Of a DNA stretch of 64,000 bases, positions 38,407-63,436 are shown in pieces. The translations under genes and the position numbers were made by a program. Numbering within the stretch: the first letter of the stretch is position 1; each line of letters opens with the position of its first letter. The notes under the pieces are model-generated. The model made no database searches and was not told the origin of the DNA. It saw nothing but the letters and a program-made list of their open reading frames with translations. Origin of the DNA: Mobula hypostoma (Eukaryota); contig NC_086115.1 of assembly GCF_963921235.1 (NCBI RefSeq), positions 31,806,001-31,870,000 of the forward strand, given 5' to 3'.

Positions 38407-40570
38407 ATAGAAACATAGAAACATAGAAAATAGGTGCAGGAGTAGGCCATTCGGCCCTTCGAGCCTGCACCGCCATTTATTATGATCATGGCTGATCATC
38501 CAACTCAGAACCCCGCCCCAGCCTTCCCTCCACACCCCCTGACCCCTGTAGCCACAAGGGCCATATCTAACTCCCTCTTAAACATAGCCAATGAACTGGC
38601 CTCAACAGTTTGCTGTGGCAGAGAATTCCACAGATTCACCACTCTCTGTGTGAAGAAGTTTTTCCTAATCTCGGTCCTAAAAGGCTTCCCCTCTATCCTC
38701 AAACTGTGACCCCTCGTTCTGGACTTCCCCAACATCGGGAACAATCTTCCTGCATCTAGCCTGTCCAATCCCTTTAGGATCTTATACGTTTCAATCAGAT
38801 CCCCCCTCAATCTTCTAAATTCCAATGAGTACAAGCCCAGTTCATCCAGTCTTTCTTCATATGAAAGTCCTGCCATCCCAGGAATCAATCTGGTGAACCT
38901 TCTTTGTACTCCCTCTATGGCAAAGATGTCTTTCCTCAGATTAGGGGACCAAAACTGCACACAATACTCCAGGTGTGGTCTCACCAAAGCCTTGTACAAC
39001 TGCAGTAGTACCTCCCTGCTCCTGTACTCGAATCCTCTCGCTATAAATGCCAGCATACCATTCACCTTTTTCACCGCCTGCTGTACCTGCATGCCCACTT
39101 TCAATGACTGGTGTATAATGACACCCAGGTCTCGTTGCACCTCCCCTTTTCCTAATCGGCCACCATTCAGATAATAATCTGTTTTCCTATTTTTGCCACC
39201 AAAGTGGATAACTTCACATTTATCCACATTAAATTGCATCTGCCATGAGTTTGCCCACTCACCCAACCTATCCAAGTCACCCTGCATCCTCTTAGCATCC
39301 TCCTCACTGCTAACACTGCCACCCAGCTTCGTGTCATCCGCAAACTTGGAGATGCTGCATTTAATTCCCTCATCCAAGTCATTAATATATATTGTAAACA
39401 ACTGGGGTCCCAGCACTGAGCCTTGCGGTACCCCACTAGTCACTGCCTGCCATTCTGAAAAGGTCCCGTTTATTCCCACTCTTTGCTTCCTGTCTGCTAA
39501 CCAATTCTCCACCCACACCAATACCTTACCCCCAATACCGTGTGCTTTAAGTTTGCACACTAATCTCCTGTGTGGGACCTTCTCAAAAGCCTTTTGAAAA
39601 TCCAAATATACCACATCCACTGGTTCTCCCCTATCCACTCTACTAGTTACATCCTCAAAAAATTCTAAGAGATTCGTCAGACATGATTTTCCTTTCACAA
39701 ATCCATGCTGACTTTGTCGATCATTTCACCGCTTTCCAAATGTGCTGTTATCACATCCTTGATAACTGACTCCAGCAGTTTCCCCACCACCGACGTTAGG
39801 CTAACCGGTCTATAATTCCCCGGTTTCTCTCTCCCTCCTTTTTTAAAAAGTGGGGTTACATTAGCCACCCTCCAATCCTCAGGAACTAGTCCAGAATCTA
39901 ACGAGTTTTGAAAAATTATCACTAATGCATCCACTATTTCTTGGGCTACTTCCTTAAGCACTCTAGGATGCAGACCATCTGGCCCTGGGGATTTATCTGC
40001 CTTCAATCCCTTCAATTTACCTAACACCACTTCCCTACTAACATGTATTTCACTCAGTTCCTCCATCTCACTGGACCCTCTGTCCCTTACTATTTCTGGA
40101 AGATTATTTATGTCCTCCTTAGTGAAGACAGAACCAAAGTAATTATTCAATTGGTCTGCCATGTCCTTGCTCCCCATAATCAATTCACCTGTTTCTGTCT
40201 GCAGGGGACCTACATTTGTCTTTACCAGTCTTTTCCTTTTTACATATCTATAAAAGCTTTTACAGTCCGTTTTTATGTTCTCCGCCAGTTTTCTCTCATA
40301 ATCTTTTTTCCCCTTCCTAATTAAGCCCTTTGTCCTCCTCTGCTGAACTCTGAATTTCTCCCGGTCCTCAGGTGAGCAACTTTCACTGGCTAATTTGTAT
40401 GCTACTTCTTTGGAATTGATACTATCCCTAATTTCTCTTGTCAGCCACGGGTGCACTACCTTCCTTGATTTATTCTTTTGCCAAACTGGGATGAACAATT
40501 GTTGTAGTTCATCCATGCAACCTTTAAATGCTTGCCATTGCATATCCACCGTCAATCCTTTAAGTATCAT
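38407..40570 (-). mobile_element. Young 5'-truncated CR1 LINE; ORF2 (RT) with a single frameshift
   Basis: ORFs 39695-40591 and 38505-39698: KSPGPDG, NYRPVSLTS, YLDFQKAF, GVPQGSVLGP, KFADDTKL; (tttctatg)n tail. Confidence 0.97.
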
Positions 40571-40739
40571 GTGTTGGTCGACATCCAACAATTACTACCA
40601 ATTAGAATTAATTTATTTTCACAGTATATCTGGGATTCTGATTATATTTCATGTATTTCAACTGGAAACAAAAATCACCCAATAAGATCACTTAGATATT
40701 GATATAAATACTCACATCCACTTAATTCTCCACACTCAA

Positions 40740-41169: not shown

Positions 41170-41810
41170 ATCAGTAGGGCGACTAGGACTTGATGTTTCA
41201 ATCCCTATGGTAAGTCGGCACTCTTGATGTTGACAGTGGGCTTGGAGTGGTGACAAGGAGGGAGGATAGGTACGCCATCGAGTTCATCAGGTGGGTACCC
41301 TCCTTCTTTGACATTTCGTTAATAAGCCCACGACGTCTCCAGAGGGCTCAATGGTGCTACCTGGCATCCCAGATACACCCCCCTCAGTTCCACACCAGCC
41401 TGTCGTCATCTTGCAGCCCAGTTGTTGTCTTTCCTTTTAATCCAAATCTAATCGCTGCTTTCTTCTGCTGCATTTGACAAGGACTTGACTGCTTCTTGGA
41501 GGGAGTGACCCCTCACCCCTATCTTCCTCAATAGACTGGTCGTAGATGTAGCAACGAATCCACTGCATCCCACCTCTACAGGGGAAATCTTGGTCTTCCG
41601 GCCATTCTGGGCAGCTTCAGTTGCCAGTTCAGAGTACTTGGTCTATTTCCTCTCATAAGCTTCTTCGACACCATCTTCCCATGGTACTGTCAATTCCACA
41701 ACATATGCCAGCTTGGCTGTTGTGGACCACAAGACCATGTCTGGCTGGAGTGTTGTAACCGCAATGTCCGGGGGAAACACAAGCTTTTTTTTTCCAAGTC
41801 CACGTCCATT
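41170..41810 (-). mobile_element. Non-LTR retrotransposon 3' end with a restriction-like endonuclease (HERO/NeSL-like)
   Basis: TTLQPDMVLWSTTAKLAYVVELTVPWEDGVEEAYERK..KY (PD..E..K REL motif). Confidence 0.82.
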
Positions 41811-41938
41811 TTCCAATCCCAAGCAACCTGTAATAGTGGTCTCTTCCACTGCATGAGAAGGAATTTCTATTTGAATTAGCATCATTCTCCACTTTGGAAC
41901 ATTACAAAGCATTTCACAGCTGAAGTGGTGCCCTTACA

Positions 41939-43260
41939 TGTCACAATGGTGGGCATTGGGAGCAAGGGTGGACCCAAATGCAAGACACATCTTGTGAGGT
42001 TAATTAGATTTAGTTTATTGTTTGATACCAGGACAGCAAAGCAGAAAGAGAAATAGCGAACAGGACAAGGACTACAACTAGGCTGGGACCAAGGGTCTGG
42101 GCTTGGACTCAGAATCGGCTCCCAGAACTAGAAGAGACATGAAGAAGCTAGGGTATGGACTCCGAGCCAGGGACTGGGCAAGGACCCAGTACCTGGGTCT
42201 TGCCTCGGGCTCAGACCCTAGAACCAGGCATGAACATGACATGGACTAGGGAGAGGAGGAACATGGAAAACAGATCCTCTGTCTCGGGAGAGCAGGTACA
42301 TGGAGCCATCGACACATACACAGAACACAGAGTCGGGACCCCTCCTTGGGTACAGGACATAGGGCTGGGACTCACACACAGAACAGAGAGCCGGGACCCC
42401 TCCTTGGGTACAGGACATAGGGCCGGGACTCATGACCCTCGGCGGGGCAACGGCAAGACGGCCTGACTTACCCCACGGAGGCAAGGACAAGACAAACACC
42501 AAAGAACAACACAGTTCCTATCTAGCTCCAGCGATAGAACTAGACCAAGGTGCAGGCGAGGGCTACAGACGAGGGCTAGAGGTGAGAGGGGCAGAGAAGT
42601 GATTCAGACAGGGGGGTAGGACAGGAATCACAGACTGCTATGGCCAGGACTTAACTAGGTACTCGGATGCCACCAGGGCACGGACTTGACTTGATACTCG
42701 GATGCTGCCAGAGCCAGGACTTGACTTGGTACTCGGATGCCGCCGGAGCCAGGACTTGGACGTGGTACTTGGATGCCGCCGGAGCCAGGACTTGGACTTG
42801 GATGTGGTACTTGGATGTCGCCGGAGCCAGGATGTGGTACTTGGAACCTCCGGGTAGAGGTGAGCTCTAGACTCGGCCCAGGAACAGTAGATAGTGGCTC
42901 CTGATTCTCTCCGGCGGGTTAACTGATGGACCCACCTTGATGAGGAAACTTTGCAGGCTCGCTTTGGCGAGGTAACTGGACAGGGTTGCTCCAGTGAGGA
43001 GAGGCGAATTACCGGCACTCGCTTCGGCAGAGACCAGGCTTGCTTCGGCCAGATGACATCGGCACACCGTAGCTTTGACGACTTTGCAGACGCTCCCACA
43101 CTGAACGGCTGAAAGCCGGAGACTATAGACTACCGGTTCAGCCGAGAGCTAATTGCTTCTAACCACCAAAGCCGAGGGGCACGGGAAAACAGGGAATCAA
43201 TGGTCCGGATCGTAACATAAACAAAGTAAATTTAAAGGGACCCCGATCCGGACCATGACA
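41939..43260 (-). mobile_element. Solo LTR of the sushi-like family at 50791-54323
   Basis: TGTCA...TGACA ends; 5-bp TSD TTACA/TTACG with one CpG-type mismatch; reverse complement is colinear with both LTRs of 50791-54323. Confidence 0.92.
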
Positions 43261-48990: not shown

Positions 48991-50921
48991 GCAAATGAAA
49001 GAAAACAAAGGGAAAATGGGCCATCAAACCTGGGATGTCCCACCTGTGACTGCATTCCGTCATGAAGCTAGTCTACTGGATCTACATGATGTTCATCTTT
49101 CTTTTGCTGATCTGTCATTTCACCCATTGTTGAGCCTCATTTTCATGCAGTTCTTCACAAGGTAATCAAAAGATTTTAGAAACACAAGTAAGTTATATCT
49201 TCTCACACTCAGTTAGCTGATGAACAAGTTATCTCAAATGAATTCTTGCAATGAATCATTATCCTAAGCTCCCAGTTGTCAGCAATTAAGACCATAAGAT
49301 ATAGGAACAGAAGTAGGCTATTTGGCCCATCAAGTCTTCTCTGCCATTCAGTCATGGGCTGATCCAATTCTTCCAGTCAACCCCACTCCCCTGCCTTCTC
49401 CCCATACCCTTTGATGCCCTGGCTAATCAAGAACATATCTATCTGCCTTAAATACACCCAATGACTTGGCATCCACAGCCGCTCGTGGCAACAAGTTTCA
49501 CAAATTTACCACCCTCTGACTAAAGTAATTTCTCCGCATCTCTGTTCTAAATGGACATCCTTCAACCCTGAAGTTGTTCCCTCTTGTCCTAAACTCCCCT
49601 GCCATGGGAAATAACTTTGCCATATCTAATCTGTTCAGGCCTTTTAACATTTGGAATGTTTCTATGAGATCCCCCCCTTCATTCTCCTGAACTCCAGGGA
49701 ATACAGCCCAAGATCTGTCAGACATTCCTCATACGGTAACTCTTTCATTCCAGGCATCATTTTCATGAATCTTCTCTGAACCCTTTCCAATGTCAGTATA
49801 CCTTTCTAAAATAAGGAGCCCAAAACTGCACACAATACTCCAAGTGTGGTTTCATGAGTGCCTTAGAGAGCCTCAAATCACATCCCGGCTCTTATATTCT
49901 ATACCTCCAGAAATGAAAGCCAACATTGCATTCGCCTTCTTCACCACTGACTCAATCTGGAGGTTAACATTTAGGATACCCTGCACAAGGATTCCCAAGT
50001 CCCTTTGCATCTCTGCATTTTGAATTCTCTCCCCATCTAAATAATAGTCTGCCCGTTTATTTCTTCCACGAAAGTGCATGACTATACACTTCCTAACATT
50101 GTACTTCATTTGCCACTTCTTTGCCCATTCCCCTAAACGATCTAAGTCTCTCTGCAGGCTCTCTGTTTCCTCAACACTACCCGCTCCTCCACCTATCTTT
50201 GTATCATCCGCAAACATAGCCACAAATCCACTAATCCCATAGTCCACATCATTGACATATATCGTAAAAAGCAGTGATCCCAACACCGACCCCTGTGGAA
50301 CTCCATTGGTAACCAGCAGCCAGCCAGAGTAAGATCCCTTTATTCCCACTCTCTGTTTTTTGCCAATCAGCCAATGCTCCACCTATGCTAGTAACTCCCC
50401 TGTAATTCCATGGGCTCTTATCTTGCTAAGCAGCCTCATGTGCTGCACCTTGCCAAAGGCCTTCTGAAAATCCAAGTACACCATATTTCCTGCATCTCCT
50501 TTGTCTACTCTGCTTGTAATTTCCTCAAAAAATTGCAGTAGGTTAGTCAGGCAGGATTTTCCTTTCAGGAAACCATGCTGGCTTTGGCCTATCTTGTCAC
50601 ATGCCTCCAGATACCCCATAACCTCATCCCTAATAATCAATTCCAACAACTTCCCAACCACTGATTTCAGGCTAGCAGGTCTTTATTTCCCTTTCTGCTG
50701 CCTCCCATCCTTCTTAAATAGTGGAGTAACATTTGCAATTTTCCAGTCATCCGGTACAATGACAGAATCTACTAATTCTTTAAAGATCATTGTCATGGTC
50801 CGGATTGGAGTCCCTTTAAATTTAGCTTGTTTATGTTATGATCCGGACCGTTGATTCCCTGTTTTCCCGTGTCCCTCGACTTTGGTGATTAGAGGCAATT
50901 AACACTCGGCTGAACCAGTAG

Positions 50922-50961
50922 TTTATAGTCTCCGGCTTTCAGCCGTTCGGTGCGGGAGCAT
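50922..50961 (+). promoter_or_regulatory. Putative LTR TATA box (50922-50927) and transcript start complementary to the PBS
   Basis: tttata followed ~25 nt later by gcgggagcat, which is 9/10 complementary to acgctcccgc at 52686-52695. Confidence 0.6.
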
Positions 50962-51022
50962 CTGCAAAGTCATCAAAAGCACGGTGTGCCGATGTCATCT
51001 GGCCGGAGCAAGCCTAGTCTCT

Positions 51023-51248
51023 GCCGAAGCGAGTGCCGGTAATTCGTCCTTCCTCACCGGAGCAACCCTGTCCAATTACCTCGCCGAAGCGAGTGCCGGT
51101 AATTCATCCTTCCTCACCGGAGCAACCCTGTCCAATTACCTCGCCGAAGCGAGTGCCGGTAATTCGTCCTTCCTCACCGGAGCAACCCTGTCCAATTACC
51201 TCGCCGAAGCGAGTGCCGGTAATTCGTCCTTCCTCACCGGAGCAACCC
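51023..51248. repeat. 60-bp tandem array (~3.8 copies) in the 5' LTR
   Basis: gccgaagcgagtgccggtaattcgtccttcctcaccggagcaaccctgtccaattacctc. Confidence 0.95.
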
Positions 51249-51624
51249 AAAGCGAGCCTGCGAAGTTTCCTCGTCACGGTGGGTCCGCCGCTGTCCACTG
51301 TTCCCGGGTCGAGTCGAGAGCTCGTCACTACCCAGAGACTCCAAGTCAAGTCCTGGCCCCGGTGGCATTCAAGCACCAAGTCAAGTCCTGTCCCTGGCAG
51401 CATTCTAGCACCAAGTCAAGTCCTGGCCCTGGCGGCTTCCCAGTTCTGAGTCAAATCCTGGCCCTGGCGGTCTGTGACTCCTGTCCTACCCCCTTGTCTG
51501 AATCCCTTCTCTGCCTCTCTCACCTCTAGCCCTCATCTGCAGCCCCCGCCTGCACTTCGGCCTAGTTCCATCACCGGAGGTAGATAGGTACTGTCTGGTG
51601 TTCATTTGTGTTGGTCTTGTCTTG

Positions 51625-52182
51625 TTTTGTACTCGCCTCCATGGGGTAAGTCAGGCCGTCTTGCCGTTGCCCTGCGGGGAGTCATGTCTTGTCTTGTCTT
51701 GTCTTCACCTCCGTGGAGTAAGTCAGGCCGTCTTGTCGTTGCTCCGTGGGGGGTCATGTCTTGTCGTGTCTTGTCCTCGCCTCTGTGGGGTAAGTCAGGC
51801 CATCTTGCCGTTGCTCCGCGGGGGGTCATGTCTTGTCTTGTCTGGTCCTCGCCTCCGTGGGGGTAAGTCTGGCCATCTTGCCATTGCCCCGCGGGGGGTC
51901 ATGTCTTGTCCTCGCCTCCGTGGGGTAGGTCAGGCCGTCTTGCCGTTGCCCCGCGGGGGGTCATGTTCTGTCTTGTCTTGTCCTCGCCTCCGTGGGGTAA
52001 GTCAGGCCATCTTGCCGTTGCTCCGCGGGGGGTCATGTCTTGTCGTGTCTTGTCCTCGCCTCCGTGGGGTAGGTCAGGCCGTCTTGCCGTTGCCCCGTGG
52101 GGGGTCATGTTCTGTCTTGTCTTGTCCTTGCCTCCGTGGAGTAAGTCAGGCCGTCTTGCCGTTGCCCCGCGGGGGGTCATGA
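51625..52182. repeat. ~65-bp tandem array (~8-9 copies) in the 5' LTR
   Basis: ctcgcctccgtggggtaagtcaggccgtcttgccgttgccccgcggggggtcatgtcttgtcttgt-like unit. Confidence 0.92.
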
Positions 52183-53261
52183 GTCCCAGCCCTATGTCCT
52201 GTGCCCAAGGAGTGGTCCCGGCTCTCTGTTCTGTGTGTGAGTCCCGGCCCTATGTCCTGTACCCAAGAAGGGGTCCCGACTTCTGTGTTCTGTGTATGTG
52301 TCCATGGTTCCATGTACCTGCTCCCGAGACCGAGGCTCTGTATTCCCATGTTCCTCCTCTCCCTACCCCATGTCATGTCTTTGCCTGGTCCTGGGGTCCG
52401 AGCCCGAGGCAAGACCCAGGTACAGGATCCTTGCCCAGTCTCTGGCTCGGAGTCCATACCCTAACCTCTTCATGTCTCCTCTAGTTCTGGGAGCCGATTC
52501 TGAGTCCAAGCCCAGACCCTTGGTCCCAGCCTAGTCGTAGTCCTGAGTCCTTGTCCAGTTTGCTATTTCCTGCTCCTGCCTTGCCCTCCTGGTATTGAAC
52601 AATAAACTAAATCGAAGTAACCTTACAATATGTGTTTTGCATTTGGGTCCACCTTTGCTCCCAATGCCCCTGCCATTGTGACAGAACGCTCCCGCCAAAC
52701 ATGGACCCAGCAGACACAAACTGTTTTTCCGAACACTTGTCAGCCTGAAAGTCAAGATGTTGTTCTGTTTTGCCCGCTGGCCAAATCCCACCTGGGTCAT
52801 CGATAATACAGGCAAATCTGTTGGTCGCCTGGAGGCTCCCATTGGGAGGAGGGTACTGTCATGGTCCGGATTGGGGTCCCTTTAAATTTAGCTTGTTTAT
52901 GTTCCAATCTGGACCCTTGATTCCCTGTTTTCCCGTGTCCCTCGACTTTGGTGATTAGAGGCAATTAACACTCGGCTGAACCAGTAGTTTATAGTCTCTG
53001 GCTTTCAGCCGTTCGGTGCGGGAGCATCTGCAAAGTCATCAAAGGCACAGTGTGCCGATGTCATCTGGCCGGAGCAAGCCTAGTCTCTGCCGAAGCGAGT
53101 GCCGGTAATTCGCCCTTCCTCACCGGAGCAACCCTCGCCGAAGCGAGCCTGCAAAGTTTCCTCGTCACGGTGGATCCCTCAGTTAACCCGCCGGAGAGAA
53201 TCAGGAGCCGCTGTCTACTGTTCCTGGGTCGAGTCGAGAGCTCGTCACTACCCAGAGCTCG

Positions 53262-53460
53262 AAGTCAAGTCCTGGCCCTGGCGGCATTCTAGCACCAAGT
53301 CAAGTCCTGGCCCTGGCGGCATTCAAGCACCAAGTCAAGTCCTGGCCCTGGCGGCATTCAAGCACCAAGTCAAGTCCTGGCCCTGGTGACATTCAAGCAC
53401 CAAGTCAAGTCCTTGCACTGGCGGCTTCCCAGTTCTGAGTCAAGTCCTGGCCCTGGCGGT
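53262..53460. repeat. ~31-36-bp tandem array in the 3' LTR
   Basis: caagtcaagtcctggccctggcggcattcaagcac repeated ~5-6 times. Confidence 0.9.
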
Positions 53461-56400
53461 CTGTGATTCCTGTCCTACCTCCCGTCTGAATTCCTTCTCT
53501 GCCCCTCTCGCCTCTAGCCCTCGTCTGCAGCCCCTGCCTGCACTTCGGTCTAGTTCCATCGCCAGAGCTAGATAGGTACTGTCTGGTGTTCATTCGTGTT
53601 GGTCTTGTCTTGTTTTGTACTCGCTTCCATGGGGTAAGTCAGGCCGTCTTGCCGTTGCCCTGCGGGGAGTCATGTCTTGTCTTGTCTTGTCTTGTCTTCA
53701 CCTCCGTGGAGTAAGTCAGTCCGTCTTGCCGTTGCTCCGTGGGGGGTCATGTCTTGTCGTGTCTTGTCCTCGCCTCCGTGGGGTAGGTCAGGCCGTCTTG
53801 CCGTTGCCCCGCGGAGGGTCATGAGTCCCGGCCCTATGTCCTGTACCCAAGGAGGGGTCCCGGCTCTCTGTTCTGTGTGTGAGTCCCGGCCCTATATCCT
53901 GTACCCAAGGAGGGGTCCCGACTCTGTGTTCTGTGTACGTGTCCATGGTTCCATGTACCTACTCCCCAAGACCGAGGCTCTGTTTTCCATGTTCCTCCTC
54001 TCCTTAGCCCATGTCATGTCCTTGCCTGGTCCTGGGGTCCGAGCCCGAGGCAAGATCCAGGTACTGGGTCCTTGCCCAGTCTCTGGCTCAGAGTCCATAC
54101 CCTAGCCTCTTCATGTCTCCTCTAGTTTTGGGAGCCGATTCTGAGCCCTAGCCCAGACCCTTGGTCCCAGCCTAGTCATAGCCCTGAGTCCTTGTCCAGG
54201 TCGATATTTCCTGCTCCTGCCTTGCTCTCCTGGTATCGAACAATAAACTAAATCGAAGTAACCTCACAAGATGTGTCTTGCATTTGGGTCCACCCGCGTC
54301 CAATTGCCCCCGTCATTGTGACAATCATTGTCAATGCAATCTCTCCAGCTACTTCCTTCGGAACCCAAGGTGCATTGCGTCAAGTCCAGGAGATTTATCC
54401 ACCTCGGACGATTAAGCTTCCTGAGCACCTTCTCAGTCGTAATTTTCACTGCACATACTTCACTTCCTTGACACTCCTGAATGTCCGGTATAGTGCAGGT
54501 GTCTGCAACTGTGAAGACTGATGCAAAATACACATTCAGTTCCTCTGCCATCTCTGCATCTCTCATTACAATATCTGCAGCATCATTTTCTATTGGCCCT
54601 ATATCTACCCTCAACTCTCTTTCACCCTTTATATACTTAAAAAAGCTTTTAGTATCTTCTTTGATATTAGTCGCCAGGTTCCTTTCATAAATCATCTTTT
54701 CCTTCCTAATGATCTTCATAGTTTTCTTCTGCAAATTTCTAAAAGCTTCCCAATCCTCCATCTTCTCACTAGCTTTGACTTCATTGTATGCCCTCTTTTT
54801 TGCTTTTACTTTGGCTCTGACTTCACTTGTCAGCCACAGTAGTGTCCTTCTTCCATTCGAAAATTTCTTCTTATTTGGAATATATCTGTCTTGCACTTCC
54901 CTCATTCTTCCCAGAAACTCCAGCCATTGCTACTCTACTGTCCTACCTGCTAGTGTCCCTTTCCAGTCAACATTGGCCAGTTCCCCTCTCATACCATTGT
55001 AATTTCCTTTATTCCACTGAAATACCGACACATTGGAATTTAGTTTCTCTTTCTCAAATTTCCAAGTGAACTCAATCATATTGTGACCTCTGTTCCCTAA
55101 GGGTTCCTTAACCTTAAGCTCTCTTATCACCTCCGGATCATTACACAACACCCAATCCAGCATAGCTGATCCCCTAGTGGGCTCAACAACAAGCTGTTCT
55201 AAAAAGCCATCCCTTAGACATTCTACAAATTCTCTCTCTTGAGGTCCAGTACTGGCCTGGTTTTCCCAATCCACTTTCATGTTAAAATCTCCAATGATTA
55301 TCATGACATTGACCTTCTGACACACCTTTTCTATCTCTTGCTGTAACATGTAATCCACATCCCAGCTGCTGTTTGGAGGCCTGCTTGGGCAGAGTCTCCC
55401 CAATATTTCATGAGTATATCCCTCCCCACTACTGGAAGTATCTACAGGAAGCACTGCCTCAAGAAGGCAACATCTTTTAACAGAGATCCCCACATTATGG
55501 CCATGTCATCTTCTTACAGCTCTCTTTGGGCAGGTTCAGGAACAGCTATTTCCCTTCCACAATTCAGTATTTGAACCAACCAGCAAAACCCTTTTCACTA
55601 CAGTTTAACGATACTATGATCACATTGATCACTTTTCAGTAAAATAGACTTTGATTTGTTTGTCATTGTAATTGTGTTCTTACTTATAAAGACTGTTAAA
55701 TTAACTTTTTCTTGTGAATGTTGCTTATACGATGCTATGTATCTATGATGCTGCTACAAGTATTGGTGCATACATGTACTTGTCTGTATGACAATGAACT
55801 GTTTATAAACCATAAACAGTTTGGAGCTGGGGAGGAAAGGAAGGTGGTAGCTCTTTGTGTGGAAGAGGAAGGCTGCACATTGAAGTGGAACTTGAGAAGT
55901 AAGACACTAAAGCCTGTCATTTTCATAATTCTACAATTGTCCATTCACAATCAATGGAATAGTTACAGCATAGAAGGAAACTTTCTCTGCCCAATGAAGC
56001 AGTGGAGGCTACCTCAGTAAATATACTTAAGACAAGGCTGGATAGATTTTTTGCATAGTAGGGGAATTAAGGGTTATGAGGAAAAAGCAGGTAAGTGGAG
56101 ATGAGTCCATGGCCAGATCAGCCTTGATGTAATTGAATGGTGGAGCAGGCTCAACGGGCCAAATGGTCTACTCCTGCTCCTATTTCTTGTGTTCTTATGT
56201 CCAGTCCATGCCACTTCTATGTAAGGGTAATCCCTCTGGTACTGAAAAATCTTTCCTTTTGTATACTTATTCCATTCATTTTGAAAGCTATAATTGAATA
56301 AGCTTTCATTATTAATGCTGATAGAGCAGTCCACAAACTGGCCGTTAACTGTGTAAAAATACTTTTCCTCTAGGTGTTTTTCTAATCATTTTTATTCTAT

Positions 56401-62419: not shown

Positions 62420-62485
62420 AAAGAAAATGAAAACAAATGTATTCTTTACATTTATGTAAAGAATACATTCGTTTTCATTTTCTTT
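62420..62485. repeat. AT-rich palindrome with 31-bp arms and one mismatch
   Basis: aaagaaaatgaaaacaaatgtattctttaca-ttta-tgtaaagaatacattcgttttcattttcttt. Confidence 0.92.
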
Positions 62486-62501
62486 CAGTATAATTGTAAG
62501 C

Positions 62502-62940
62502 ATCCTTTATTTCAGATATTACAGTACATGTACCCAGCAAGTATCCTTTATTTCATATATTTCAGTACGTGTACCCAGCAAGTACTCTTATTTCATATAT
62601 TTCAGTACGTGTACCCAGCAAGTATCCTTGTTTCATATATTTCAGTACGTGTACCCAGCAAGTACTCTTATTTCATATATTTCAGTACGTGTACCCAGCA
62701 AGTATCCTTGTTTCATATATTTCAGTATGTGTACCCAGCAAGTACCCTTGTTTCATATATTTCAGTACGTGTACCCAGCAAGTATCCTTGTTCCATATAT
62801 TTCAGTAGGTGTACCCAGCAAGTACCCTTGTTTCATATATTTCAGTACGTGTACCCAGCAAGTATCCTTGTTCCATATATTTCAGTAGATGTACCCCGCA
62901 AGTATCCTTGTTCCATATATTTCAGTACGTGTACCCAGCA
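62502..62940. repeat. 40-bp minisatellite, ~10.5 copies
   Basis: gtacccagcaagtatccttgtttcatatatttcagtacgt repeated with few variants. Confidence 0.97.
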
Positions 62941-63436
62941 CTACAGCTCAGAGCATTTCCTCTTCACAGTACTTTAAGGACTCCTCTATTAAATGTGATG
63001 CTAGCATATTACAATCTTAAAATATCCTCCAACTGTGGTGGTCCAAGTCTAAAAGAGGTACTTCCTCATACTTGGGTAATTTGTCAGTTGAGTTCTAATC
63101 CAAAGTATAACCTCCGGCAGAGCTGGTCTTCTCAAAGTTAAGATTCACCACATGATTCACTTCATTAAAAAGAGTCAGATATTTCTGTTCTTGTGCCTGC
63201 CTGTAACTTATTCACTTTACAACTAGAAATTGAAATTCCCCATCAATATTCTCTCCCCTCCACCTACTGCCTTATTGATTTAAATGCACAGTTGCACATA
63301 GTCATTCTCTGCCCTTTAGGTTGGGGTCCACAAGAGTTGAAAGCAACCCTGTGGTACAGTAGCTCTAATTAAATCCTGTTGGAGCTCGACTCAATTTGTG
63401 CTTGCAAGATTATGTATTTACAACATCTTCTAACGT

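What the first reader, a model, noticed from the sequence alone, without database searches (positions are those of the whole stretch)
52684..52696. tRNA-independent self-priming signature: the PBS pairs with the predicted transcript 5' end
Seen: the sequence after the 5' LTR (gaacgctcccgcc) does not begin with TGG, so it is not a tRNA-3'-CCA PBS. Its core acgctcccgc (52686-52695) is complementary to gcgggagcat at 50952-50961, ~25 nt downstream of tttata. The solo LTR has gtgggagcgt at this position, so the consensus gcgggagcgt pairs 10/10 and both mismatches are CpG decay. Known: fission yeast Tf1 primes reverse transcription with the first ~11 nt of its own RNA, and this was proposed for vertebrate Tf1/sushi elements. 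Inference: this family self-primes, and the pairing would close a loop of ~1.7 kb.
Basis: partly seen in the sequence, partly recalled or inferred. Interest (0 to 1): 0.8.

Follow-up and report, generated by a model that had tools for sequence, protein, structure and literature searches.

The report
Self-priming signature in mini LTR retroelement
A gene-less retroelement made almost entirely of its two long terminal repeats has, exactly where a tRNA primer site should be, ten bases that pair with the predicted start of its own RNA; this is the known Tf1/sushi way of starting reverse transcription, plausible here but unproven.

Summary
Window 50791-54323 holds LTR (1893 nt), a 173-nt core and LTR (1467 nt), flanked by a 5-bp duplication, ATCAT. 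The core starts GA-ACGCTCCCGC with no TGG. That 10-mer is 9/10 complementary to GCGGGAGCAT at 50952-61. This site lies 25 nt after the only TATA in the LTR.

Taken alone, the match in this copy is weak: 16-22% of shuffled controls do as well. Two things raise it:
- Contigs of two related species read G, not A, at 50960 in about 73% of depth. The family's common letter therefore gives 10/10, which about 1% of controls reach.
- Only 3.4% of LTR positions lie at TATA+20-35.

The LTR layout matches published Sushi-clade LTRs: TATA near the 5' end, and AATAAA with a GU-rich tract near the 3' end. A U5-leader stem encloses the site.

Best reading (about 0.6): a fossil non-autonomous member of a self-priming, Tf1/sushi-like family, with an R region and loop of about 1.7 kb.

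Not tested: the transcription start, the species' tRNA set, covariation among copies, and the autonomous partner. Both LTRs of this copy carry the mismatching A, so this copy was probably born mismatched.

First readers left 22 similar unchecked notes elsewhere in this genome. The mechanism is already known for this group, so interest is modest.

The parts
50786..50790 (+). Target-site duplication ATCAT, left copy
   Evidence: Same 5 nt at 54324-54328
50791..52683 (+). 5' LTR (1893 nt), TGTCATGG...TTGTGACA
   Evidence: Direct repeat with 52857-54323. Unique parts are 92-96% identical.
50922..50927 (+). TTTATA, the only TATA-containing motif in the LTR; putative promoter box
   Evidence: Motif count. 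Kept in LTR2; TCTATA in the solo LTR.
50952..50961 (+). Putative self-primer GCGGGAGCAT at the predicted RNA 5' end (U3/R border); 9/10 complementary to 52686-95
   Evidence: The family's common letter at 50960 is G, which gives 10/10.
51023..52303 (+). Minisatellites inside the putative R (units of 60, 35, 72 and 58 nt). They account for the length differences between LTR copies.
   Evidence: Tandem Repeats Finder (TRF). The 60-nt unit has 3.8 copies in LTR1 against about 1 in the other two copies. The 72-nt unit has 8.0 copies in LTR1, 3.0 in LTR2 and about 1 in the solo LTR.
52601..52639 (+). Polyadenylation module: the only AATAAA (52601-06), CA at 52626-27, GU-rich TGTGTTTTG (52631-39). 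Puts the R/U5 border near 52627.
   Evidence: Motif count; sequence read directly
52644..52651 (+). U5 arm (TGGGTCCA) of the U5-leader stem
   Evidence: Pairs with 52702-09 and appears in the minimum-energy fold, z -2.69. Conserved in all three LTRs.
52684..52696 (+). Primer-binding region: GA spacer, then ACGCTCCCGC (52686-95)
   Evidence: No TGG. None of the 40 best-supported differences among family contigs falls here.
52702..52709 (+). Leader arm (TGGACCCA) of the U5-leader stem
52684..52856 (+). 173-nt non-coding core (PBS, leader, PPT)
   Evidence: About 8-10 contigs in each of two species cover it, at 40-60 times lower depth than the LTR.
52844..52853 (+). Polypurine tract GGGAGGAGGG, 3 nt before the 3' LTR
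   Evidence: Sequence read directly
52857..54323 (+). 3' LTR (1467 nt). Carries the same GCGGGAGCAT at 53018-27.
54324..54328 (+). Target-site duplication ATCAT, right copy
41939..43260 (-). Solo LTR of the same family with TSD CGTAA/TGTAA. Its primer site reads GTGGGAGCGT, which would pair 10/10 with the PBS through one G.U pair.

Best explanation
This is an old, non-autonomous LTR retroelement: two LTRs around a 173-nt core that keeps only the PBS, a leader stem arm and the PPT. Its family most likely started reverse transcription by Tf1/sushi-type self-priming.

Proposed mechanism (inferred, not shown):
1. Transcription starts about 30 nt after the single TATA, at or near 50952, and ends after the single AATAAA near 52627. 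This gives U3 of about 161 nt, R of about 1.68 kb and U5 of about 56 nt.
2. The first ten bases of the RNA (GCGGGAGCGU in most family copies) anneal to ACGCUCCCGC, which starts two bases after the LTR's terminal CA.
3. The partner element's RT/RNase H cuts behind the duplex, and the freed 3' end primes a minus-strand strong-stop DNA of about 1.7 kb.
4. A U5-leader stem (52644-51 with 52702-09) holds the PBS in a loop.

Shown: the letters, their positions, the family's common G at 50960, the single TATA and AATAAA, the TSD and the PPT. Inferred: the start site, the cleavage, and the use of this duplex as primer.
For: - There is no TGG, and a 10-mer exactly 2 nt after the CA is complementary to an LTR site.
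- That site begins 25 nt after the end of the only TATA in 1893 nt. Only 3.4% of LTR positions are so placed.
- Contigs of two species read G at 50960 in about 73% of depth, which makes the family-level match 10/10. About 1% of shuffled or decoy controls reach an exact match.
- The solo LTR's variant still pairs 10/10 through a G.U pair, with a duplex energy of -24.0 kcal/mol.
- Among all 20-nt windows of LTR1, this site gives the best duplex with the PBS.
- The U5-PBS-leader segment folds with z -2.69 into a stem that leaves the PBS in a loop.
- The layout equals that described for Sushi-clade LTRs: an AT-rich box near the 5' end, AATAAA unusually near the 3' end, and a TGTYANR start (PMC3601003).
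- It meets the criterion used to call self-priming in a survey of plant LTR elements (PMC6317226).
- Self-priming is described as a common feature of the Tf1/sushi group, including vertebrates (PMC10085805; PMC4600332).
- The TSD is 5 bp and the PPT is correctly placed.
- The host genome is CpG-depleted (observed/expected 0.33), and the nearest atlas clusters to its LINE RT are mostly Chordata.
Against: - In this copy the match is 9/10, with an A.C mismatch next to the primer's 3' end. Such a match occurs by chance in 16-22% of controls.
- Both LTRs carry the A, so the copy probably had it at insertion (one search gives the rates). The model can explain this: new LTRs copy this site from the parent's 3' LTR, while the PBS comes from the parent's primer or PBS. 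That explanation is ad hoc.
- A second 9/10 complement lies at 51000-09, and its duplex is only 1.5 kcal/mol weaker.
- The cofolding gain of -7.9 kcal/mol ranks 7th of 118 LTR windows, and 12 of 200 shuffles reach it.
- The start site rests on one non-canonical TATA-like motif.
- Contigs of runs guessed to be RNA span 50952 without a break. That is uninformative either way.
- An R and loop of 1.7 kb is about three times the whole mean Sushi LTR (572 nt).
- There is no coding sequence, so the family's clade is unknown.
Confidence: 0.6

Rival explanations
1. The complementarity is chance. The family was primed by something else that pairs with 52684-52700, such as an internal or half tRNA fragment (as in copia-type elements) or another small RNA. 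In that case the LTR site at 50952 has no role.
For: - A 9/10 match arises in 16-22% of controls, and six such matches exist in LTR1.
- Folding energies are not distinctive.
- Half-tRNA priming without TGG is documented: 1/2 tRNA-Met and 1/2 tRNA-Ile (PMC6317226).
- No host tRNA set could be searched, and the window holds no tRNA.
Against: - The match is exact with the family's common letters, which has a chance of about 1%.
- It sits at the TATA-predicted start, where 3.4% of positions qualify, and exactly 2 nt from the CA.
- An Rfam scan of 52600-52900 found no tRNA-like or small-RNA-like match at E up to 10. That scan has little power for 10-13 nt.
- Half-tRNA priming was reported only for Ty1/copia lineages in that survey.
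Confidence: 0.27
2. It was a canonical tRNA 3'-end PBS that has decayed beyond recognition in this old copy.
For: The copy is old: its LTRs differ by 4-7% in unique parts, and CpG decay is evident.
Against: - No TGG lies within 0-5 nt of the LTR end.
- The nearest TGG (52706) is over 20 nt away. A primer annealing there would have made that spacer part of the LTR, yet it is absent from the 3' LTR end.
- Among the family contigs that cover the core, three majority differences from this copy were listed further in (52731, 52735, 52793) and none in 52684-97. This copy's PBS letters therefore appear to be the family's.
Confidence: 0.05
3. The mini structure is a one-off internal deletion of a full-length element after insertion, so its 'PBS' and pairing say nothing about a replicating mini element.
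For: - The core is 40-60 times rarer than the LTR.
- In organism B its 5' half is about 4 times deeper than its 3' half. This suggests the two halves also exist apart, in longer elements.
Against: - Both halves of the core are multi-copy in two species: 8-10 contigs, with depth far above the roughly 8x of a unique contig.
- This reading also does not conflict with self-priming. The PBS and LTR would simply be those of the parent.
Confidence: 0.08

Closest known systems
Tf1/sushi group of chromoviruses (Ty3/gypsy): Tf1, Tf2 and Tj1 of fission yeasts, and sushi-ichi and relatives of vertebrates
   Same: - No tRNA-type PBS.
- About 10-11 nt at the predicted RNA 5' end complementary to the site just after the 5' LTR's CA.
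- A PBS-adjacent sequence pairing with an LTR sequence downstream of the primer, which is part of the 'pretzel'.
- A TATA-like box near the LTR's 5' end and AATAAA near its 3' end.
- A TGTYANR LTR start and a 5-bp TSD.
   Different: - No gag or pol, so clade membership is untestable.
- The LTR is 1.5-1.9 kb against a mean of 572 nt for the Sushi LTR training set, so the primer-PBS loop and the strong-stop DNA would be about 1.2-1.7 kb.
- R is filled with minisatellites.
- The three-duplex structure is only partly recognisable.
- This copy has a mismatch in the duplex.
TRIM and LARD non-autonomous LTR retrotransposons
   Same: Two LTRs, PBS, PPT and TSD, no coding capacity, presumably mobilised in trans.
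   Different: - TRIMs are under 1 kb with 100-250 bp repeats and a tRNA PBS (PMC6934838).
- LARDs, from my own knowledge, have a long non-coding interior.
- Here the LTRs are very long and the interior is 173 nt, so about 95% of the element is LTR.
Plant Tcn1 (Ty3/gypsy) and TAR (Ty1/copia) lineages predicted to self-prime
   Same: Called by the same sequence criterion: at least 10 bp of complementarity starting 0-5 bp after the 5' LTR (PMC6317226).
   Different: They are plant elements and autonomous. As here, no experimental proof exists.

Membership tests
Tf1/sushi self-priming LTR retrotransposons | Pol (RT-RNase H-IN with chromodomain) placed in the Tf1/sushi clade | not testable with these tools
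   The element has no coding sequence. No autonomous partner is in the window, and none could be fetched.
Tf1/sushi self-priming LTR retrotransposons | No tRNA 3'-end PBS (TGG) next to the 5' LTR | tested here: met
   GAACGCTCCCGCC follows the LTR's terminal CA. The nearest TGG is over 20 nt away.
Tf1/sushi self-priming LTR retrotransposons | At least 10 nt starting 0-5 nt after the 5' LTR complementary to a 5' LTR sequence | tested here: inconclusive
   The match is 9/10 (8 contiguous) in this copy. It is 10/10 with the letter that about 73% of family contig depth carries at 50960. Chance is 16-22% for 9/10 and about 1% for 10/10.
Tf1/sushi self-priming LTR retrotransposons | The complementary LTR sequence is the very 5' end of the element's RNA | not testable with these tools
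   Only the TATA spacing supports it: 25 nt after the end of the sole TATA. No raw RNA reads exist, and contigs cannot show starts.
Tf1/sushi self-priming LTR retrotransposons | Three-duplex 'pretzel': two further duplexes between PBS-adjacent sequences and LTR sequences downstream of the primer | tested here: inconclusive
   One duplex, U5 52644-51 with leader 52702-09, is present and lies in the minimum-energy fold, z -2.69. The other, 50994-51010 with 52665-82, is interrupted and is not better than controls.
Tf1/sushi self-priming LTR retrotransposons | RNase H cleavage of the RNA duplex to free the primer | not testable with these tools
   This is a biochemical property of the partner's RT.
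Sushi-clade LTR architecture (Benachenhou et al. 2013) | Termini TGTYANR...CNTNACA, an AT-rich box near the 5' end, and AATAAA close to the 3' end | tested here: met
   - The start TGTCATG fits.
- The end TGTGACA fits 4 of the 5 specified letters.
- The sole TATA is 132 nt from the 5' end.
- The sole AATAAA is 82 nt from the 3' end.
- The non-chromoviral rGmr1 clade has near-identical termini, so this feature does not discriminate between the two.
TRIM | Element under 1 kb, terminal repeats of 100-250 bp, tRNA PBS | tested here: not met
   The element is 3533 nt, its LTRs are 1467-1893 nt, and it has no tRNA-type PBS (definition).
tRNA-primed LTR elements / ERVs | PBS complementary to at least 12 nt of a tRNA 3' end | tested here: not met
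   There is no TGG at offset 0-5. Internal tRNA fragments were not testable.

The most novel reading that the evidence does not exclude
A replicon that is about 95% LTR. On this reading, a coding-less element whose RNA is almost entirely a 1.2-1.7 kb minisatellite-filled R region self-primes across that whole distance. It would make a strong-stop DNA several times longer than any described, yet the LTR family reached very many copies in at least two species. That would show that Tf1-type self-priming does not need a compact 5' leader and that primer and PBS can be brought together over kilobases, or between co-packaged RNAs.
Probability: 0.35. Interest if true: 0.5.

Novelty: new member of a known kind. 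Interest (0 to 1): 0.3.

Why it matters
Self-priming has been shown experimentally only for fission-yeast Tf1. For vertebrate elements it rests on sequence signatures. This family is abundant in at least two related chordate species and pairs such a signature with an extreme geometry, 1.2-1.7 kb between primer and PBS. It would therefore be a convenient natural case for asking, from RNA 5'-end data and copy-to-copy covariation, whether the mechanism really operates in vertebrates and how far apart the partners can lie. As a single degraded copy it adds little by itself. The mechanism and its presence in the group are already in the literature.

Tried and rejected
1. Other copies for covariation:
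   - A degenerate PBS-leader pattern in metagenome contigs gave one hit (L001). It has no similarity to the element and 58% GC, so it is a chance match.
   - Two LTR patterns in viral contigs found nothing.
   - I used accidental ORFs across the LTR end, PBS and core (52534-52842, minus strand) and inside the LTR (52149-52457, minus strand) as handles in the protein database. Neither found anything.
2. Mapping the RNA start: both run searches returned only assembled contigs, and the RNA labels are guesses. The laid contigs span 50952 and show no informative ends, so there is no verdict on the start.
3. Thermodynamics as a discriminator: cofolding of 50952-51011 with 52625-52730 does form the primer-PBS duplex. 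The energy gain is ordinary, though: 7th of 118 windows, and 12 of 200 shuffles reach it.
4. The Rfam scan of the PBS region gave only two meaningless lncRNA hits with E above 1.
5. The window has no tRNA genes and no further fragments of the family.
6. A lead from memory only, not tested: 52700-52715 resembles the complement of the initiator-tRNA anticodon arm (about 11/12), and GCGGGAG occurs in some vertebrate tRNAs. The first lies 17 nt from the LTR end. A primer there would have put the spacer into the LTR, which the 3' LTR end contradicts. The second shares only 7 nt.
The family's state at 50960 is reported only as read counts.

Full report
**What is there**

The finding lies inside a complete LTR retroelement at 50791-54323. 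It consists of a 5' LTR (50791-52683, 1893 nt), a 173-nt core (52684-52856) and a 3' LTR (52857-54323, 1467 nt). It is flanked by the 5-bp duplication ATCAT.

- The LTRs begin TGTCATGG and end TTGTGACA.
- The core ends in a polypurine tract, GGGAGGAGGG, 3 nt before the 3' LTR.
- No ORF of the core or LTR has a family match, and the element has no gag or pol.
- A solo LTR of the same family lies on the minus strand at 41939-43260, with the duplication CGTAA/TGTAA.
- In unique parts the two LTRs differ by about 4-7%. The length difference comes from minisatellites with units of 60, 35, 72 and 58 nt.
- The element split a LINE ORF2. On the minus strand, the endonuclease part is at 54930-55493 and the RT part at 49873-50382.
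- The window is CpG-depleted (observed/expected 0.33). The atlas clusters nearest to a LINE RT in the window are mostly Chordata.

**Check of the observation**

Every stated letter and coordinate is correct.

- After the LTR's terminal CA come GA and then ACGCTCCCGC (52686-95). No TGG is present.
- The reverse complement of that 10-mer is GCGGGAGCGT. LTR1 has GCGGGAGCAT at 50952-61, and LTR2 has the same letters at 53018-27. The solo LTR has GTGGGAGCGT.
- Both departures are at CpG.
- As RNA, the solo variant would still pair 10/10 through a G.U pair, with a duplex energy of -24.0 kcal/mol. The LTR1 and LTR2 variant gives an A.C mismatch next to the primer's 3' end.
- The loop between the partners is 1724 nt.

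**Family-level evidence**

I laid contigs of four public runs, from two coded species, on 50700-52900.

- The LTR is highly repeated, with roughly 100 contigs at each site.
- At 50960 the contigs read G rather than this copy's A in 15878 of 21733 and 80095 of 111742 depth units in the two DNA runs. They do so in nearly all depth of the two runs guessed to be RNA.
- Depth falls 40-60 fold on entering the core. Even so, 8-10 contigs per species cover the core, so it is multi-copy.
- Three majority differences from this copy were listed deeper in the core (52731, 52735, 52793) and none in 52684-97. Only the 40 best-supported differences were shown, so this is weak evidence that the PBS is conserved.

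**Is it more than chance?**

By itself, not in this copy.

- A 9/10 or better complement of a 10-mer starting 0-5 nt after the LTR occurs in 16% of dinucleotide shuffles of LTR1, 15.5% of decoy sites and 22% of shuffled PBS. An exact 10/10 occurs in about 1%.
- LTR1 contains six 9/10 complements to the first 30 nt of the core. One of them, at 51000-09, also falls inside the allowed offsets.

Position lifts the case above chance.

- LTR1 (57% G+C) has a single TATA-containing motif, TTTATA at 50922-27, and a single AATAAA at 52601-06.
- Only 3.4% of LTR positions lie 20-35 nt downstream of the start of any AT-only run of 6 nt or more.
- The complement starts 25 nt after the end of TTTATA, where a TATA-directed start is expected.
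- The PBS side starts exactly 2 nt after the CA, the usual spacing.
- Multiplying the two gives roughly 0.006 for this copy and 3e-4 for the family's common letters. These figures are indicative only. The criteria come from the Tf1 model, but they were applied after the fact.

**Anatomy of the LTR**

AATAAA (52601-06) is followed by CA at 52626-27 and the GU-rich TGTGTTTTG at 52631-39, which together form a complete polyadenylation module. The inferred layout is:

| Part | Coordinates | Length |
|---|---|---|
| U3 | 50791-50951 | about 161 nt |
| R | 50952 to about 52627 | about 1.68 kb |
| U5 | 52628-52683 | about 56 nt |

This unusual layout, with the promoter box near the 5' end and the poly(A) signal near the 3' end, is what Benachenhou et al. 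describe for Sushi-clade LTRs. They also report a TGTYANR start, which is met here, and a CNTNACA end, of which 4 of 5 specified letters are met (PMC3601003).

Folded alone, 52625-52730 gives a stem between U5 (52644-51, TGGGTCCA) and the leader (52702-09, TGGACCCA). The stem leaves the PBS in a loop, with z -2.69, and 2 of 200 shuffles fold as well. Duplexes between PBS-adjacent and LTR sequences are part of the 'pretzel' required for Tf1 priming (PMC10085805).

A further duplex predicted by cofolding (50994-51010 with 52665-82) is interrupted. The overall cofolding gain of -7.9 kcal/mol is ordinary: it ranks 7th of 118 LTR windows, and 12 of 200 shuffles reach it. The proposed site is the best duplex partner of the PBS in the whole LTR, but only by 1.5 kcal/mol.

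**Mechanism**

The best-supported reading is Tf1/sushi-type self-priming.

1. The first ten bases of the RNA anneal to the PBS.
2. The partner element's RT/RNase H cuts behind the duplex.
3. The freed 3' end primes minus-strand synthesis through U5 and R.

Every step of this mechanism is inference.

Both LTRs of this copy carry the mismatching A. Given private-change rates of about 12% per CpG-context column per LTR, two parallel decays are unlikely, so the A was probably there at insertion. The model allows this. The new LTRs copy the first bases of R from the parent's 3' LTR, while the PBS comes from the parent's primer or PBS. The explanation is ad hoc, and it means this copy was probably unfit to prime itself.

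**Comparison with what is known**

- Self-priming was demonstrated for Tf1 and is regarded as common to the Tf1/sushi group, including vertebrate members (PMC4600332; PMC10085805).
- It is predicted for plant Tcn1 and TAR lineages by the same criterion used here (PMC6317226).
- Membership of this element in the Tf1/sushi clade cannot be tested without pol. It can only be said to look as if it works like one.
- It is neither a TRIM (too long, no tRNA PBS) nor a typical LARD.
- Its unusual points are a 173-nt interior between 1.5-1.9 kb LTRs and a primer-to-PBS distance of 1.2-1.7 kb, against a mean length of 572 nt for whole Sushi LTRs.

**What could not be done**

- The transcription start could not be mapped, because no raw RNA reads exist.
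- No further full copies could be fetched.
- No host tRNA set was available, so priming by an internal tRNA fragment is not excluded.

**Earlier notes of this scan**

First readers left 22 notes of self-priming signatures on other pieces of the same genome, and several notes of sushi-like chromoviruses. These are unchecked leads, and I did not count them as support.

**Verdict**

It is a new member of a known kind with an unusual geometry, and of modest interest.

Noticed in passing
window 49873-50790 and 54324-55493 (minus strand): The LTR element is nested in a LINE ORF2. The endonuclease domain (Exo_endo_phos_2) is at 54930-55493 and the RT (RVT_1) at 49873-50382. The conserved RT N-terminal motif (...VPDDWKIANVTPLFKK...) ends right at the insertion point.
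   Followed up: partly
window 38505-40591 (minus strand): A second LINE-like RT: ORFs of 397 and 298 aa, RVT_1 at E 2e-22. The nearest atlas clusters are 'jockey-like' RTs, mostly from Chordata.
   Followed up: partly
window 51023-51248: A 60-nt minisatellite has 3.8 copies at 98% identity in the 5' LTR only (about 1 copy in the 3' LTR and the solo LTR). A 72-nt unit has 8, 3 and about 1 copies in the three LTRs. Arrays inside the LTR have therefore grown or shrunk after insertion, or during reverse transcription.
   Followed up: partly
window 52698-52845, depth table: In organism B the 5' half of the core is about 4 times deeper than the 3' half (10119 against 2429). In organism A the two halves are similar (1788 against 1203). 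This hints that the PBS-leader half is shared with other, perhaps longer, elements.
   Followed up: no
window 52655, loose end in run X19: One contig follows the LTR to 52655 and then continues CAGCGGCCCCCAAAACATGGAGAC.... This can be loosely aligned to this copy's CAGAACGCTCCCGCCAAACATGGACCC. It may be a subfamily with a different LTR end and PBS, which would be useful for a covariation test.
   Followed up: no
window 62465-63020: A tandem array of a 40-nt unit, with at least 10 in-register copies (repeat finder family D1).
   Followed up: no
window 50932-50946: A small hairpin, CGGCT-TTC-AGCCG, lies between the TATA-like box and the predicted start. It is conserved in all three LTR copies.
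   Followed up: no
window 41400-41900 (minus strand): Directly downstream of the solo LTR the sequence looks coding-like (for example ...TVPWEDGVEEAYERK...). It may be a fragment of another mobile element. I did not analyse it.
   Followed up: no
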